Shown in pieces: positions 1 through 49,042 of a stretch of 64,000 nucleotides of DNA. The position numbers were made by a program, and so were the translations under genes. Source of the stretch: Prasinococcaceae sp. CCMP 1430 (lineage: Eukaryota; Plantae; Prasinodermophyta); NCBI GenBank assembly GCA_013416795.1, contig RQSC01001079.1:208861-272860 (forward strand), written 5' to 3'. Below the pieces are notes generated by a model that ran no database searches, had not been told where the DNA came from, and saw nothing but the letters and a program-made list of their open reading frames with translations. Within the stretch, counting starts at the first letter, position 1. Every line of letters starts with the position of its first letter.

Positions 1-323
1 AGCGTTAGGTGGAACCCCAGCGCTCCGGCGTATCGCACCCAGTGCTTCGCCTGCATAGTGCACTCCTCTGCCTTGGACGCGAGGTAGAGGCACGCGACGC
101 CCACCGCCTGCGGGTCGTACTCGTCGTCGCGGTTGGCGACCGCAGTGAAGCGCCGCAGCATGACGATGGCCGTCGCGGCGACGCGTTGGCGCATGCGCGC
201 CTTGCACGACAGCTGCACCATCCACATGGTCGTGGCCGCCAGCGCGCCGCGGCCCCTCGGGATATCCACGCGCGGCAGGATCCACCGGCGGCAGTGCGTT
301 GACTGCCAGAAGTTCGACGCCAT
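1..323 (-). CDS. CYCC: Cyclin C, 5' part; runs off the window edge (not in ORF track)
   Basis: Manual translation from ATG at 323: MASNFWQSTHCRRWIL...RQRVAATAIVMLRRF...ACLYLASKAEE, matching the cyclin C N-terminus (MAxNFWxSSH) and cyclin box (RQRVxATA, CLYLASKAEE). Confidence 0.85.
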   Translation of the reverse strand, partial: MASNFWQSTHCRRWILPRVDIPRGRGALAATTMWMVQLSCKARMRQRVAATAIVMLRRFTAVANRDDEYDPQAVGVACLYLASKAEECTMQAKHWVRYAGALGFHLT

Positions 324-495
324 CGCCGCCGCCACCGCAGCCTCCGCGGCCGCAAACGCAGCACGATCGCAGCAACCAGCGGCCGTCCCCTCCCTCTCCC
401 TCTCTTCCGAACCCACCGACTCGCCCCCGCCCCGCCCGCCCCGCCCGCCCCGCCCGTCCCGCCCGCCTCGCCCGCCACACCGCGCGCGCGCTTGC

Positions 496-624
496 ACCGC
501 CTGCGCCGCCCAGTTCCTTCGGGGTCGAGAGCTTCACGGCAACGCGGCCATCCTCGCTGCGGGCTTCGCCATCGCGTCCGCCGGTGGCAGTGGCGCGGGT
601 GCTGTACTTGACGTCGACGGACAT
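496..624 (-). pseudogene. ohr: Truncated bacterial-type organic hydroperoxide resistance protein Ohr (first 43 codons only)
   Basis: Translation MSVDVKYSTRATATGGRDGEARSEDGRVAVKLSTPKELGGAGG is the Ohr N-terminus (ATATGGRDG...KLSTPKELGGAGG). It breaks off just before the catalytic TNPEQLFAAGYxACF motif. AAGGAG Shine-Dalgarno at 632-637. Confidence 0.85.
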
Positions 625-762
625 GCTCGGTCTCCTTAAAAACATTCTGCGATAATCATTATCGCGATAACGTTTAGCTAGTGCGTGAGTCGACCCTTGT
701 CCAGCGAATATTTATCGCGATATGTATTTTGACGAATTTGGCCCTGGCCAAGGAGACCGATC
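625..762. promoter_or_regulatory. Bacterial-type divergent ohr/ohrR intergenic region with two Shine-Dalgarno sites and palindromic operator candidates
   Basis: AT-rich island in GC-rich surroundings. Perfect palindromes TTATCGCGATAA (659-670) and TATCGCGATA (713-722). AAGGAG precedes both ATGs (632-637 on minus, 750-755 on plus). Confidence 0.7.
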
Positions 763-828
763 ATGCCCGCCGCCGCACCGCTCGACGACCAGCTCTGCTT
801 CTCGCTCTACGCGACGAGCATGGCGATC
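763..828 (+). pseudogene. ohrR: Truncated bacterial MarR-family regulator OhrR (first 22 codons; frame then runs into GC-rich host-like sequence to TAG at 907-909)
   Basis: MPAAAPLDDQLCFSLYATSMAI carries the OhrR LDDQLCFxLY motif with the redox-sensing Cys. It is divergent from ohr and has an SD at 750-755. Confidence 0.8.
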
Positions 829-1584
829 CTCGCTACGCGCGCGCCGCGCGGCGCACGCCGCCGCGGCGCAGCTCATCTCGCGCGCACCGCAGCTGCCGTC
901 GCCACCTAGCTTGAGACATCGGATGTACCAGCATGGTATTACATTTGAAGAAACGATCGCATCACCCACGGGCGCCTTCATTCACGGCGTCGCGCTGAAT
1001 GCATTGTGCATGCGGGCCATTCGCGGACGGGCACATTTCGAAACGCGAAAGCGCGCTGCGCACACGGCCGGCGGGCGCGCGAGCGCGCGGCACACAGCGT
1101 GGCTGCGCTGGGGGAGGCCGCGCTGGGCTCCTCAGAGGGGAGGTGGGGATGGAGCGCGCGGCGGGAGATGCGGTGGCCGCCGGCGCGCCCCGATCAGGCG
1201 CAGCGCTCGGCCTTGCCGAAACGCTGCGCCAACTCGCCACCGACGAGCGGGAGGGCGATGACGAGCAGGCCCCAAAGGACGGTGAGGGCGGGCGAGCTGA
1301 TCGCCATGCGTTGGATGCCGGGCGGTGTGGTAAATCCGAAAAATACATACAGACAAAGTGTGATGCTTGGCTTCTCTTGAAGGTATGTCATGTGTCCCAG
1401 TAGTACTGCGTGTGCATTGCGGGAGCAATTCGTGTGAGCGTTCCATGCGAGGCTGTCCAGTCATAGAAGTGTCGAGCAAGTGAGCCTATACCGTGGGCAG
1501 AAGATGATAGTGGATGGAAGCGGTGCGTTTTGAGGCTGCCTGCGTGGCCCCAGCGGGTCGTGCGGCGCACATCAGGTCAACGTC

Positions 1585-4547: not shown

Positions 4548-5402
4548 GTCGATCGCCGCCGCCCTGAGCGGGGGGGGGGGCGGGGCGGCGTCAGTGCTAT
4601 CTGGGTGAGTAGGTGGGTAGGCGCTCGTGCGCGGCGCCCCCCAGCCAGCGGCTCGCGGAGCCGCGGGGGAGTGCGCGCGCGCACAGAGGGGCGCGCGCAA
4701 TGTGTGGCGCGCGCACCGCGCGCGAATCGAATCGCAAGCGCGCGCGACGCGCCGCCCCATCAAACGCCACGCGCGCCGCTCGCGCGCGCATTCCGTCCCG
4801 GGCACCGCCGCGCGCGAAAAAGGAGGCGCCCCGCGCGAAAATTGCGAGGGCGAAATTGATCGCCGGCGGGCGCCCCCGCGAGACATTCATCCAATGAATC
4901 GTCTCACGATGAGTTTGGCACTGTCGATCGATGGGAGACCTCAGATGCGTCGCGAGCACTGAAGAAATGATCCAGTGCGCCTGGGAGAGCGGTCGCGCGG
5001 GCGGCGGGGCGGGCGCGTGCGCACTGGCGAACCCACTCACCCGGCGTGCGCGCGCTGCGCGCGCTCTCAGGGCCCTGGCCCGCCAGTCAATTCCAGCACT
5101 CAGGGCCGCGCCGCGCGAGCCCAAATATCTGGGCCACGTGGCAGCGCGCCAGAAAATGATCCATCCGACGGGCAGGCGCGCCGAGCGTCGTCCGGCCGGC
5201 GCGAGGACAGGGGCAGTACGCTCCCCTGCAGCAATGCAACTTGATTGGTTTTGTGGCTGCACTCCTCGGGCTGCCCTCGGGGCGCTGCAGCGCGTGCGGG
5301 CGCGGCGGGCACCCCGTGCGGGCAGCACACGGTGGCCGGTGCACGCCCCTCGGTGGGGAGCGGCACCGCGCCGAACCGGCTCGTCGGGGTCAGCCGGTGG
5401 CC

Positions 5403-36174: not shown

Positions 36175-36478
36175 NNNNNNNNNNNNNNNNNNNNNNNNNN
36201 NNNNNNNNNNNNNNNNNNNNNNNNNNNNNNNNNNNNNNNNNNNNNNNNNNNNNNNNNNNNNNNNNNNNNNNNNNNNNNNNNNNNNNNNNNNNNNNNNNNN
36301 NNNNNNNNNNNNNNNNNNNNNNNNNNNNNNNNNNNNNNNNNNNNNNNNNNNNNNNNNNNNNNNNNNNNNNNNNNNNNNNNNNNNNNNNNNNNNNNNNNNN
36401 NNNNNNNNNNNNNNNNNNNNNNNNNNNNNNNNNNNNNNNNNNNNNNNNNNNNNNNNNNNNNNNNNNNNNNNNNNNNNN
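36175..36478. other. Assembly gap (N run) flanked by G and T homopolymers
   Basis: Run of n characters. Confidence 1.
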
Positions 36479-43644: not shown

Positions 43645-46600
43645 GTGGGAAAAAACCTTTCCTTTATGACAAACACATGTTTTCTCGCTCGCAAACAAGG
43701 GAAACCAGACCGGAGAACCCAAAGAAGGAAAGAAGCATCCGCCCCCTCCAAGGGCAGCGGCACGGTGTCCGAGGACAAGTACCTCACGCTCGAGGCCGAG
43801 TACCGCATCCTCAAGAAGGAGCACGCCGAGCGCGAGGGGAAGCAGAAGGTGCTGCTCGCGCGGCTCGCGCGCACGGAGGAGGCCGCGAAGCGTGCGATGC
43901 TCAAGGCGGGGCATGGCAAGGGGACGCTCAGCGTGGCCAAGCAGTTCGACTTCGAGGCGGAGAACGCCGAGCTCCACGACAAGCTGCGCGAGGCGCAGCG
44001 CAAGATCGACGCGCAGCACGAGCGGGTGCTGCACTTCAAGAACGTCGCGAAGGACTACAAGGCCAAGCTCGCCGACGCGATGCGCCTGGCCAAGTCGCAC
44101 CGCGCGGGGCGTGGCACCATCGGCGGAGGGGCCGGCCGCAAGAGCCACCTCATCGCCGTGCCAGAGCCCCTGGCCCAGGGCGGGGCGGCCACGGGCGGCG
44201 AACAGCTCGCCCTCGCGTCCGCCGAGGCCGCGAGGCAGTTCATGGCGCTCCGCCGCGAGCTCGAGGCGCTGCGGGAGGAGAACGCGGAGCTCACGACCAA
44301 GATCGCCGAGCAGGGCGAGGGCGCCCAGACCGCCCAGGCGCCCGCGGCGCCCGCGGCGACCACCACCGAGGCGCCTGCGCCGGCCGAGGCGGAGAGCGCC
44401 GATCGCCTGCGCCGCGAGGTCGCCACGCTGCGCAGGGAGCTCGCGGACGCCCGCGCCGCGGCGGCCGAGGCGGACCCCCTCATCGCGCCGCGCATCGTCT
44501 CGGGAGACGTCGAGCTCGCCGCCGAGGTCAAATCGGCCTGGGAGCACGTGGCGCGCCTGCAAGCGCGCTACGACTCGGCGCACGGCAACCTGGATGGCAT
44601 CAAGGCGAACCACGAGCGCGTGCTCAACAGCCTGGACGAGTCGAACAGGGCCCTCGCGGTGGAGCGCAAACGCTCCCTCGAGCTCGAATCGCAGGTGCGT
44701 CGGCTGCAGGTTGAGATCGCCGGCCTGGAGGACTACAAGCTGATGCTGCAGGAGGCGCGCGCCGAGATCGTGGTCCTCAGCAAGGAGAACACAGAGCTGC
44801 TCAACTCGGCGATGAAGGCGCCAGCCACTGCCATGGAGGAGGCCCGCTCGCTGCGGCAGCAGATCGCCCAGCACGAGCGCGAGCGGGCCGACATGGAGAT
44901 CGCCCACGCCAAGGCGCGCATGGAGGCCGTGGAGGGCCGCGCCTCGGCGCCCGACGCCACGCAGCTGGAGGTGTTCAAGCTGCGCGCCGAGCTCACCGTC
45001 GCTCGCGAGCGCATCAAGGCGCTCGAGGAAGCTACCATGTCCGCAGAGGAGATCCGAGCGCAGCTGCCGCCCGAGGCGTCGGCGCCACCGACCCCGGCGC
45101 GCCCCGGCGCGCAGCAGGCGAGCGCCCCGCCCACGCCTCTGCCCGCGCCCGACCTGAGCCCAGAGATGTACGAGGCGCTGGGCATTTCCTCGGACGTGGC
45201 CACCCTGCAGGCAGAACTGGTGACGGCGCGGCAGGAGATCTCGCGCTTGCACGCCGAGCTGGACAAGGCCAAGAAGATGCTGGCGGTGCAGGAGGAGATC
45301 GCGGCCGAGTACAAGGCCGGCGCAGAGGCGGCGGGCGCGACGTCCGCGAAGGGCACCGCCGGGGGGGACAGGGCCATCGCACAGGACCGCGAGATCGCCA
45401 GGCTGCGCGATCGCGTGCGCAAGCTCGAGGCGCAGCTCGTGGGCAGCGGCCGCGACAACACTCGAACGCTGCGGGCCGGTTCCGAGGCCGTGGACGTCGC
45501 CACGCCCGCCTCGGCCGCGAACGACGCGCAGGTGCTCGCCGCGTGCGCCGCCGACGAGAGCGTCTTCGAGCTGGTGCTCCAGAGCGCCGAGCTGAAGCCC
45601 TCGGCGACGATGGGCGCGCGCTCGAGCACCTTCCTCTCGGTGGACTTTTACGAGCACGAGACCCAGGCGACCGCCGTTCAGGCGGGCCTGCGACCGGAGT
45701 TCAACGCGACGCTGCACTACGTGTGCAAGGCGGACGAATTCCTGGCCAGGCACATGGTGGAGAAGCAGCTGGTGGTCGAGCTGCAGCGCGCCGCGGGGGT
45801 GAACTTTTCGCAGCTGGGCGTCGCCGTGCTTGACATGCGACAGGCTCTGCGCGCCTCCGCGTACGGCGAGCGGCACGCCGGCGGCGTGGTTGACATCACG
45901 TCGCCCGCGGGCGTCGCCCTCGGCAAGCTGCGCTATTCGGCGCGCCTGTTGCGCGCGCTGCCGCCCAGCGCGGTGGCCGCGGCAGAGGCGGCCGCGGCGG
46001 ACCTCATCCTGAGCAGCGCGTCGGCGGGCGGCGCGGGCAGCAGCGGCGCGCGGCCAACGTCCGCCGTGCGTGTCATCGTCGAGCGCTGCGTGCGCCTTCG
46101 GCAGCGGCCGGGCGCGGAGGGCGGGGAGGCGGCCATGCGGCCGTACGTGAGCTACACGCTGCCCGGGTGCCGGCGGCACGACACCGCCGTGCAGCGCGGC
46201 GCTGATCCCGTCTTCAACGACGCGCGCGCCATCCCTCACGAGCGCGAGGGCTCGAGCGCCGATCGGCTGGCGGGCGGCGTGCTGGACCTGCAGGTCTTCG
46301 ACGACGAGGCCCCCGAGGACGACGCCGAGGCCGGCGTGGTGGGCCTCTGCGAGGTCCCCCTGGCGGACTTCGTGCGCTCGGGCCTGCCGCTTTCGGGTGC
46401 CTTTCCCCTCCGGGATCGCTTCGGCGCGCCCACGGGTCACGTGGTGCTGCACGTGGTGTGGCAGGACGCGCGCACGGAGGACGGCGTCGCCGCGCTGGCG
46501 CGCCAGCAGTCGGGATGGGGCATTGCCCGGACGGACGGAGACGCCGCGCTCGAGGCGGCCGAGGCCGCAACGGCGGCCGTCGGCGCGGCCGCCACCGCCA

Positions 46601-49028: not shown

Positions 49029-49042
49029 NNNNNNNNNNNNNN
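48967..49042. other. Poly-G run (~62 nt) abutting a 14-nt N gap
   Basis: Read directly. Probably a sequencing or assembly artefact in the PMM/GST divergent promoter. Confidence 0.9.

What the first reader, a model, noticed from the sequence alone, without database searches (positions are those of the whole stretch)
496..828. Bacterial ohr/ohrR promoter fragment embedded in an algal nuclear locus just upstream of cyclin C
Seen: a 333-bp segment encodes the first 43 codons of Ohr on minus (MSVDVKYSTRATATGGRDG...KLSTPKELGGAGG) and the first 22 codons of OhrR on plus (MPAAAPLDDQLCFSLYATSMAI). The two are divergent, each has an AAGGAG Shine-Dalgarno site, and an AT-rich spacer separates them. Both reading frames switch abruptly to GC-rich host-like sequence, Ohr before its catalytic Cys motif and OhrR before its winged helix. 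The ORF track misses both. Established: divergent ohr/ohrR is a common bacterial organic-peroxide regulon. Inference: the MSVDVKY start looks alphaproteobacterial (Sphingomonas-like). This is either a recent bacterial DNA insertion into the cyclin C promoter, ~170 bp upstream of its ATG, or a contaminant chimera. The right junction falls exactly after a GATC (825-828), so a library artefact must be excluded.
Basis: partly seen in the sequence, partly recalled or inferred. Interest (0 to 1): 0.85.

Follow-up and report, generated by a model that had tools for sequence, protein, structure and literature searches.

The report
Sphingomonas DNA scrap in algal promoter
A 332-base piece of Sphingomonas DNA (the start of two peroxide-stress genes and the spacer between them) replaces 21 bases just upstream of a marine green alga's cyclin C gene, is missing from five wild copies of the same locus, and is either a fresh scar of foreign DNA captured during break repair or an assembly fault that only the raw reads can rule out.

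Summary
Window 497-828 (332 bp) is 99.1% identical (329/332) to the ohr/ohrR divergent promoter region of a Sphingomonas sp. genome. It carries Ohr codons 1-43 on the minus strand, OhrR codons 1-22 on the plus strand, both identical to the donor proteins, and the 138-bp operator spacer. The flanks are eukaryotic: a cyclin C gene starts 173 bp to the left.

The new result is that five independent Tara metagenome scaffolds of the same alga match both flanks at 97-99% and lack the insert. They carry 21 bp that the window has lost. Both host flanks are collinear. The left junction has a 4-nt microhomology and an orphan base; the right junction is blunt. The three differences from the donor are silent or intergenic.

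My preferred reading (about 0.55) is that bacterial DNA was captured at a repaired double-strand break in the sequenced strain's lineage, very recently, and has no function. The main rival (about 0.38) is an assembly or gap-closing fault in a draft assembly that contains N gaps, at a very GC-rich site. No read-level data could be reached. A Sau3AI-type cloning artefact is not supported, and an old or functional transfer is excluded. Interest is moderate. It would be higher if reads confirm the junctions, because unchecked notes list about ten similar fragments in this genome.

The parts
1..323 (-). 5' part of the host cyclin C coding sequence (ATG at 323-321; the gene runs off the window start)
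   Evidence: Cyclin_N E 2.8e-12. It is 100% identical to residues of the 275-aa Tara proteins P0244/P0247. P0244 matches human cyclin C structures at E 4e-39.
324..495 (-). Host cyclin C upstream region, very GC-rich, with a (CCCGCC)n tract at about 425-476 and (CG)5 at 481-490
   Evidence: It is 97-99% identical to five Tara scaffolds. Three short metagenome contigs (L012, L018, L019) end inside the repeat at window ~436-455. The CG tracts were located.
496..496 (.). Orphan A at the left junction; both the wild-type host allele and the Sphingomonas donor have G here, inside a shared CGCC microhomology (495-498)
   Evidence: Alignment A3 and the junction print-out.
497..828 (.). Inserted Sphingomonas chromosomal DNA, 332 bp
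   Evidence: blastn gives 329/332 to L005 (Sphingomonas sp. GCA_038440415.1), 326/332 to L004 (strain NIBR02145) and L006 (Logan SRR24111690), and 319/332 to S. kyeonggiensis L003. Homology ends exactly at 497 and 828. The segment is absent from Tara scaffolds L013-L017.
496..624 (-). ohr 5' fragment, codons 1-43 (the last codon is completed by the orphan base and still reads Gly); truncated before Cys60 and Cys124
   Evidence: NF052637 E 4.2e-10 and TIGR03561 E 1.6e-9. It is 100% identical to residues 1-43 of the 141-aa Ohr of L005 and of P0001/P0002.
625..762 (.). Bacterial ohr-ohrR intergenic spacer (138 bp): two AAGGAG ribosome-binding sites (632-637 minus, 750-755 plus) and two copies of a palindromic TTATCGCGATA box (654-669, 707-722), the likely OhrR operators
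   Evidence: Sequence and repeats D1, I3-I6. The spacer length equals that in L003-L005, where the MarR gene starts at 1862 and ohr at 2001. No sigma-70 consensus match was found.
763..828 (+). ohrR (MarR family) 5' fragment, codons 1-22, including the sensing Cys12; truncated before the winged helix
   Evidence: Identical to residues 1-22 of the 145-aa MarR-family protein of L005. The NF052638 hit is weak, E 0.03.
829..1193 (.). Host intergenic DNA that resumes collinearly; in wild-type alleles 21 bp (GCCCTGTGGCGCGCCCTCGCT) lie between the bases matching window 495 and 829
   Evidence: blastn of the window against L013-L017 and alignment A3.

Best explanation
A double-strand break in the very GC-rich region 173 bp upstream of cyclin C was repaired by end joining. 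The repair lost 21 bp of host DNA and captured a 332-bp fragment of Sphingomonas chromosomal DNA as filler. This happened very recently in the lineage of the sequenced strain, most likely while it lived with bacteria in culture, and it is not found in wild populations. The fragment is inert debris: it holds two truncated bacterial genes and a bacterial operator region that a eukaryotic nucleus cannot use. Its only plausible effect is on cyclin C. It moves upstream promoter DNA 311 bp further away. If it is transcribed, it adds an upstream AUG (the ohr start, same strand as cyclin C) whose reading frame runs out of frame across the cyclin start. Shown here: the identity and limits of the fragment, the empty site, the 21-bp deletion and the junction anatomy. 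Inferred: that the junctions exist in real molecules, the repair pathway, the timing and any effect on cyclin C.
For: The fragment is 99.1% identical to an extant Sphingomonas genome, with sharp ends at 497 and 828. Five independent Tara scaffolds (L013-L017) from different samples match window 1-498 and 829 onward at 97-99% and lack the insert. They show a clean empty site, and the window has lost 21 bp. The two host flanks are collinear, in the same orientation, and only 21 bp apart in the wild type, which random ligation of library fragments would not produce. There is no k-mer-sized overlap between host and donor at either junction. The left has a 4-nt CGCC microhomology with an orphan A and the right has 0-1 nt, so an overlap- or graph-based misjoin has no basis. 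There are no Ns at the site, no target-site duplication and no terminal repeats. All three differences from the closest donor are silent third positions (502, 816) or intergenic (693), and two are shared with other Sphingomonas strains, so they are donor polymorphism and not decay after insertion. Five of eight metagenome contigs assembled straight across the wild-type site, so a deep isolate assembly should have managed it too if the wild-type sequence were present. Capture of short extraneous DNA during end joining is documented in a green alga: in Chlamydomonas most 'junk fragments' are under 320 bp, with some up to 1 kb (10.1101/464859).
Against: No read-level or independent data for the sequenced strain could be reached. 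The assembly is a draft with sized N gaps, one preceded by at least 55 G. The site lies between two (CG)n tracts and 25-60 bp from a repeat where three short-read contigs break, which is where gap-related faults occur. The donor's closest relatives are soil isolates, an odd partner for an open-ocean alga and a typical laboratory contaminant genus. Unchecked first-stage notes list about ten more short bacterial pieces plus organelle pieces in this assembly, some said to interrupt genes of a haploid genome, which fits a systematic artefact at least as well. No route is known for outside bacterial DNA to enter a walled picoalga.
Confidence: 0.55

Rival explanations
1. Assembly artefact. The culture or library contained Sphingomonas DNA. 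A contig break at this very GC-rich, low-complexity spot was bridged in silico, by gap closing, local reassembly or scaffolding of a small contaminant contig, using contaminant or chimeric reads. The strain's real genome would then carry the 21-bp wild-type sequence.
For: The assembly is a draft with N gaps of 304 and 14 bases. The first is under-sized against about 690 bp in Tara L010, and the second follows a run of at least 55 G. The wild-type site has 79% GC, is flanked by (CG)n tracts at 481-490 and 836-843, and lies 25-60 bp from a (CCCGCC)n tract where contigs L012, L018 and L019 all stop. The right junction has no microhomology, as an in-silico abutment would. The donor clade is soil or laboratory-type Sphingomonas. 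At 332 bp the insert is about one short-read library fragment. Unchecked notes report many similar bacterial, plastid and mitochondrial pieces in this assembly, some inside genes. Contig-level decontamination, as described for the published P. coloniale assembly (PMC7455551), would not remove embedded pieces.
Against: I could not name a standard assembler or gap closer that joins without Ns and without read overlap at both ends. A gap-free join needs reads across both junctions, meaning two independent chimeras whose bacterial ends lie 332 bp apart in the right orientation on a 5-Mb genome. Host and donor share at most 4 nt at the left junction and 0-1 nt at the right. Metagenome assemblies of much lower depth crossed the wild-type site five times. 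No other window-specific foreign block was seen in the 22 kb covered by Tara contigs, and no plasmid-like bacterial DNA was found in the rest of the window.
Confidence: 0.38
2. Physical chimera made in the laboratory, for example restriction-fragment ligation (GATC ends), blunt ligation in library construction, or template switching during amplification, and carried into the assembly by a single read or clone.
For: The right junction follows a GATC (825-828). An orphan A at the left junction resembles non-templated addition by a polymerase.
Against: The donor sequence at the left end is not GATC (CCCTCG|CCGCC), so the piece is not a Sau3AI/MboI/DpnII fragment. GATC is common: 167 sites in the window. 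A three-part molecule whose two host parts are neighbours 21 bp apart, in the same order and orientation, is not what random ligation or template switching yields.
Confidence: 0.04
3. An older, selected horizontal transfer in which the bacterial promoter piece has been co-opted as a regulatory element of cyclin C or encodes a new peptide.
For: The piece lies 173 bp upstream of cyclin C and in the same orientation as the ohr ATG.
Against: It is 99.1% identical to a living Sphingomonas, with only silent or donor-type differences and no shift toward host composition (52% GC across windows 601-800 against 68-70% in the host). It is absent from all five wild haplotypes. Both genes are truncated before their functional parts.
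Confidence: 0.02

Closest known systems
Filler or 'junk fragment' DNA captured during end joining in green algae (Chlamydomonas insertional mutants; 10.1101/464859)
   Same: A short extraneous DNA piece of a few hundred bp sits at a repaired break with small target-site changes, no duplication and no mobile-element features. The size range fits: most fragments are under 320 bp and some reach 1 kb.
   Different: In Chlamydomonas the fragments are the alga's own DNA from lysed cells and enter during artificial transformation. Here the donor is a bacterium and no transformation is known.
NUMT/NUPT formation (organelle DNA captured at nuclear double-strand breaks by NHEJ; e.g. PMC6215612)
   Same: The proposed mechanism is the same, and so is the outcome: a non-functional, recent, strain-polymorphic insert with microhomology or blunt junctions. 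Unchecked notes report mitochondrial and plastid pieces in the same genome.
   Different: The donor DNA comes from outside the cell, which needs an uptake step that organelle DNA does not.
ohr-ohrR organic hydroperoxide regulon of Sphingomonas (Ohr/OsmC peroxiredoxin plus MarR-family OhrR)
   Same: The divergent arrangement, the 138-bp spacer, the ribosome-binding sites, the paired palindromic boxes and the first 43 and 22 codons are identical to those of Sphingomonas genomes.
   Different: Only the 5' ends are present. There are no catalytic cysteines in Ohr and no DNA-binding domain in OhrR, so it is a fragment of the regulon and not a working copy.
Contaminant sequence embedded in eukaryotic draft assemblies
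   Same: The insert is near-identical to a common contaminant genus, it sits in a draft assembly with gaps, and it lies at a hard-to-sequence site.
   Different: Embedded contaminants are usually whole contigs or are bounded by Ns. This one is gap-free, bounded by collinear host DNA, and has a 21-bp target deletion.

Membership tests
Ohr subfamily peroxiredoxin (TIGR03561 / OsmC fold) | N-terminal region matches the family profile | tested here: met
   TIGR03561 E 1.6e-9 over profile positions 2-37 and NF052637 E 4.2e-10. The peptide is 100% identical to residues 1-43 of Sphingomonas Ohr.
Ohr subfamily peroxiredoxin (TIGR03561 / OsmC fold) | Full-length (~140 aa) protein with the two catalytic cysteines | tested here: not met
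   The fragment ends at residue 43 of 141. Cys60 and Cys124 of the donor protein are absent. The scores of 38-40 bits are far below the family cut-offs of 88.85 and 240.
OhrR (MarR-family peroxide-sensing repressor) | Winged helix-turn-helix DNA-binding domain | tested here: not met
   Only residues 1-22 of 145 are present. There is no Pfam MarR hit, and NF052638 scores 14 bits against a cut-off of 200.
OhrR (MarR-family peroxide-sensing repressor) | N-terminal sensing cysteine in the conserved QLCF context | tested here: met
   DDQLCFSLY is present and identical to the donor.
Divergent ohr/ohrR locus | Head-to-head genes separated by a short spacer with palindromic operator boxes | tested here: met
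   The 138-bp spacer has two TTATCGCGATA palindromes. The same layout occurs in L001 and L003-L009.
Foreign DNA captured at a double-strand break by end joining (NUMT-like insertion) | Empty site in close relatives, with both flanks collinear | tested here: met
   Five Tara scaffolds are 97-99% identical on both sides and lack the insert.
Foreign DNA captured at a double-strand break by end joining (NUMT-like insertion) | Small target deletion, short or no microhomology, orphan bases; no target-site duplication, terminal repeats or transposase | tested here: met
   There is a 21-bp deletion, a CGCC microhomology with an orphan A at the left junction and 0-1 nt at the right. No flanking direct or inverted repeats were found.
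Foreign DNA captured at a double-strand break by end joining (NUMT-like insertion) | Junctions present in real molecules of the organism (reads, PCR) | not testable with these tools
   Exact junction ORFs are not in the protein collection, the junction 30-mer is not in JGI metagenomes, and no reads of the strain are on hand.
Assembly or gap-closure artefact | N run, or sequence overlap that could mislead an assembler, at the junctions | tested here: not met
   There are no Ns within 35 kb of the site. Host and donor share at most 4 nt at the junctions.
Assembly or gap-closure artefact | Site lies in sequence where short-read assemblies break | tested here: met
   The region is 79% GC, with (CG)n tracts at 481-490 and 836-843. 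L012, L018 and L019 end at window ~436-455.
Assembly or gap-closure artefact | Read depth or pairing discontinuity across the insert | not testable with these tools
   No read data are available.

The most novel reading that the evidence does not exclude
The nuclear genome of this picoalga is repeatedly picking up short pieces of DNA from bacteria around it. This insert, with its empty site in wild populations and a 99% identical living donor, would be one of a dozen or more fresh captures in the strain. That would give a direct, countable view of the first step of bacterium-to-eukaryote gene transfer, before any selection acts.
Probability: 0.3. Interest if true: 0.75.

Novelty: new member of a known kind. 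Interest (0 to 1): 0.45.

Why it matters
Gene transfer from bacteria to algae is usually inferred from old, already useful genes. The raw first step, in which naked foreign DNA lands in a chromosome, is almost never seen. If the junctions are real, this locus shows that step with an unusually complete record. The donor lineage is known to 99%, the exact empty site is known from five wild haplotypes, the repair scar is visible, and there has been no later change. Together with the other candidate fragments noted in this genome, it would allow a rate estimate. If the junctions are not real, the locus marks a systematic fault in a reference assembly: embedded contaminant pieces that survive contig-level cleaning. 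Such pieces would contaminate gene models and counts of transferred genes. Either way the locus should be checked against the reads.

Tried and rejected
- **Pfam on the two peptides:** nothing found because they are too short.
- **Exact look-up of the neighbouring 872-aa ORF and ten other ORFs**, including seven that span the junctions: none is on record, so no independent copy of the sequenced strain was found.
- **Scan of JGI metagenomes** for the cyclin start (degenerate 44-mer) and for the right junction 30-mer: no matches.
- **Scan of the species-representative bacterial genomes** for a 48-mer of the spacer, to find a 100% donor: no match. The closest genome, L005, is evidently not a representative.
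- **Sigma-70 promoter scan of the spacer:** no consensus site.
- **Megablast of the window parts not covered by Tara contigs against plasmids**, looking for more bacterial pieces: nothing, though this test has low power.
- **Sau3AI/DpnII fragment idea:** rejected because the donor has no GATC at the left end.
- **Heteroduplex or template-switch origin of T502:** rejected because the predicted junction sequence does not fit. It is more simply a silent donor polymorphism (Ala41 GCA against GCC).
- **Assembly identity:** the published chromosome-level P. coloniale assembly (PacBio, NextDenovo, 22 chromosomes, axenic clone; PMC7455551) does not obviously match a scaffold with N gaps. I could not establish which assembly the window comes from.

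Full report
**1. What is there**

Window 497-828 is bacterial DNA. On the minus strand, an ATG at 624-622 preceded by AAGGAG (632-637) opens MSVDVKYSTRATATGGRDGEARSEDGRVAVKLSTPKELGGAGG. On the plus strand, an ATG at 763-765 preceded by AAGGAG (750-755) opens MPAAAPLDDQLCFSLYATSMAI.

The first peptide matches the Ohr models NF052637 (E 4.2e-10) and TIGR03561 (E 1.6e-9). The second matches the OhrR model only weakly (E 0.03). Pfam sees neither, which is expected for pieces this short. A blastn search against plasmids finds ohr/MarR loci of Sphingomonas, Paracoccus and others, and every match is confined to window 497-829.

**2. The donor**

A protein search with the 43 residues found 141-aa Ohr proteins of Sphingomonas kyeonggiensis and unnamed Sphingomonas strains at 100% identity. 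I fetched their contigs. All share the order saccharopine dehydrogenase, MarR regulator (145 aa), Ohr (141 aa), histidine kinase, with a 138-bp spacer between the divergent genes.

At the DNA level the window segment compares as follows:

| Locus | Source | Identity to window 497-828 |
|---|---|---|
| L005 | Sphingomonas sp. GCA_038440415.1 | 329/332 |
| L004 | strain NIBR02145, a soil isolate (PMC10353387) | 326/332 |
| L006 | Logan run SRR24111690 | 326/332 |
| L003 | S. kyeonggiensis | 319/332 |
| L007-L009 | environmental contigs | about 90.6% |

Homology starts at 497 and stops at 828 in every case.

The three differences from L005 are:
- 502, a silent change in ohr (Ala41 GCA against GCC);
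- 693, intergenic, with the window base shared with S. kyeonggiensis;
- 816, a silent change in ohrR (Thr18 ACG against ACC), with the window base shared with an environmental Sphingomonas.

These look like ordinary differences between donor strains, not decay after insertion.

The fragment ends at Ohr residue 43 of 141, before both catalytic cysteines. It ends at OhrR residue 22 of 145, before the winged helix but after the sensing cysteine. The spacer holds two copies of a palindromic TTATCGCGATA box (654-669, 707-722), which are probably the OhrR operators.

**3. The host**

The rest of the window is eukaryotic and intron-poor, with 65-75% GC. It encodes a SWIRM/Myb protein, importin-5, cactin, a serine carboxypeptidase, an MFS transporter and DCP1.

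The importin's best named relatives are land plants and streptophyte algae at 47-50% identity. A 100% identical protein comes from Tara ocean metagenomes. An earlier follow-up of this scan names the genome Prasinoderma coloniale. The GC content, green-lineage affinity and marine occurrence fit the published description (PMC7455551), but I did not verify the name.

The gene to the left of the insert is cyclin C: Cyclin_N E 2.8e-12, and human cyclin C structures E 4e-39. Its ATG is at 323 on the minus strand, 173 bp from the insert.

**4. The empty site**

This is the main new result. Searching with the cyclin N-terminus, embedded in a longer in-frame query so that full-length proteins were eligible, found a cluster of cyclin C proteins from metagenomes. 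Their contigs include five Tara scaffolds of 7.5-17.6 kb from five different samples (L013-L017). All have the same gene order as the window: CCCH zinc-finger gene, a 228-aa gene, cyclin C.

All five align to window 1-498 at 97-99% identity and to window 829 onward at 98-99%. None contains 499-828.

The multiple alignment gives the wild-type site as CGCTTGC-GCCCTGTGGCGCGCCCTCGCT-CTCGCTACGCG. The window has CGCTTGC-A-[Sphingomonas 497-828]-CTCGCTACGCG. The window allele is therefore a 21-bp deletion plus a 333-bp insertion.

- **Left junction:** host and donor share CGCC (495-498). Inside that microhomology the window has an A at 496 where both host and donor have G.
- **Right junction:** there is no more than one shared base. 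The donor continues ACGCGCGCC after its GATC.
- **Mobile-element features:** there is no target-site duplication, no terminal repeat and no mobile-element gene.

**5. Real insertion or artefact?**

*For a real event.* The two host flanks are neighbours, in the same order and orientation, which ligation or amplification chimeras would not give. Host and donor share nothing close to a k-mer or read overlap at either junction, so an overlap- or graph-based misjoin has no basis. The join has no Ns. The scar is what end joining leaves: a small deletion, microhomology on one side, a blunt end on the other, and one orphan base. Lower-depth metagenome assemblies crossed the wild-type site five times out of eight, so a deep isolate assembly should have done so too if the wild-type sequence were there. 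Capture of short extraneous DNA of just this size during end joining is documented in Chlamydomonas.

*For an artefact.* The assembly is a draft with sized gaps. One 304-N gap corresponds to about 690 bp in Tara L010, and one 14-N gap follows at least 55 G. The site is 79% GC, lies between (CG)n tracts, and is 25-60 bp from a (CCCGCC)n tract where three short contigs stop. The donor clade is soil-type Sphingomonas, a classic laboratory contaminant and an unlikely ocean partner. Unchecked first-stage notes list about ten more short bacterial pieces (215-1115 nt), plus a mitochondrial and a plastid piece, embedded in the same assembly. Several are said to sit inside genes of what is reported to be a haploid genome (PMC11884799).

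No read-level evidence was reachable.

I put the real insertion at about 0.55 and an in-silico artefact at about 0.38. A physical library chimera gets about 0.04: the GATC at the right end has no partner at the left end of the donor segment, and GATC occurs 167 times in the window. A selected, older transfer gets about 0.02. It is excluded by the 99.1% identity, the unaltered low-GC spacer, the truncations and the absence from wild haplotypes.

**6. How it works, if real**

It does nothing as a bacterial element. Neither gene is complete, and a bacterial promoter-operator has no machinery in a eukaryotic nucleus. It is a repair scar.

Its possible side effect is on cyclin C. DNA formerly 173 bp upstream of the ATG is now 505 bp away. 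The ohr ATG lies on the cyclin strand and opens a frame that stays open, out of frame, across the cyclin start for at least 207 codons. A transcript starting upstream of 624 would therefore translate cyclin C poorly. Where transcription starts is unknown.

**7. Comparison with what is known**

The event is of the same kind as NUMT/NUPT formation and as filler or 'junk fragment' capture in algal transformation. The difference is that the donor is an outside bacterium.

As a member of the Ohr or OhrR families it fails the defining tests: there are no catalytic cysteines and no DNA-binding domain. It is a fragment of a Sphingomonas ohr/ohrR locus, not a gene.

I rate it a new member of a known kind. 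Interest is moderate. It would rise considerably if reads confirm the junctions and the other fragments noted in this genome behave the same way.

Noticed in passing
window 43650-43740: A 91-bp AT-richer segment in the window stands where Tara scaffold L010 has 282 bp of GC-rich DNA. In L010 that DNA contains the start codon and first 39 codons of a large C2-domain (RPGRIP1-like) gene. The window's segment supplies a different in-frame ATG and 25 codons. This could be an allelic 5' end, a second replacement event or an assembly fault. Only one Tara contig covers the site.
   Followed up: partly
window 36175-36478 and 49029-49042: There are two N gaps. The 304-N gap corresponds to about 690 bp of G-rich and GC-rich intergenic DNA in Tara L010, so it is under-sized. 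The 14-N gap is preceded by a run of at least 55 G, which is either a very long real homopolymer or poly-G read junk at a contig end.
   Followed up: partly
same genome, other pieces (earlier notes of this scan): First-stage notes, not checked, list at least ten other short bacterial gene fragments (moeB, xdhC, acyl-CoA dehydrogenase, Lon, trbL, adenylate kinase, RpiB, uvrD, LacI; 215-1115 nt), a 2.2-kb mitochondrial piece and a plastid chlN piece embedded in nuclear scaffolds, often at the 5' ends of genes. The empty-site test used here could be applied to each of them.
   Followed up: no
window 425-476 (and the ends of L012, L018, L019): A (CCCGCC)n tract about 100-150 bp upstream of the cyclin C ATG varies in copy number among Tara haplotypes: L016 and L017 lack 9 bp. 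It is also the point where three independent short-read contigs end. On the other strand it is a G-run motif of the kind that can form G-quadruplexes, and so a plausible fragile site.
   Followed up: no
window 5000-5253: This is an indel polymorphism among wild haplotypes. Tara L017 has about 100 bp where the window and L013 have 254 bp.
   Followed up: no
window 612-637 and 750-775: Within the bacterial insert, the two divergent genes have nearly mirror-image leaders (26-nt inverted repeat, 85% complementary: AAGGAGACCGA-N-CATG on both strands). The ribosome-binding site and start context are therefore almost the same for ohr and ohrR in this Sphingomonas clade.
   Followed up: no
window 1194-1306, minus strand: A small ORF of 37 codons from an ATG at 1306 (MAISSPALTVLWGLLVIALPLVGGELAQRFGKAERCA) looks like a single-pass membrane mini-protein. 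It lies between the insert and the 228-aa gene.
   Followed up: no
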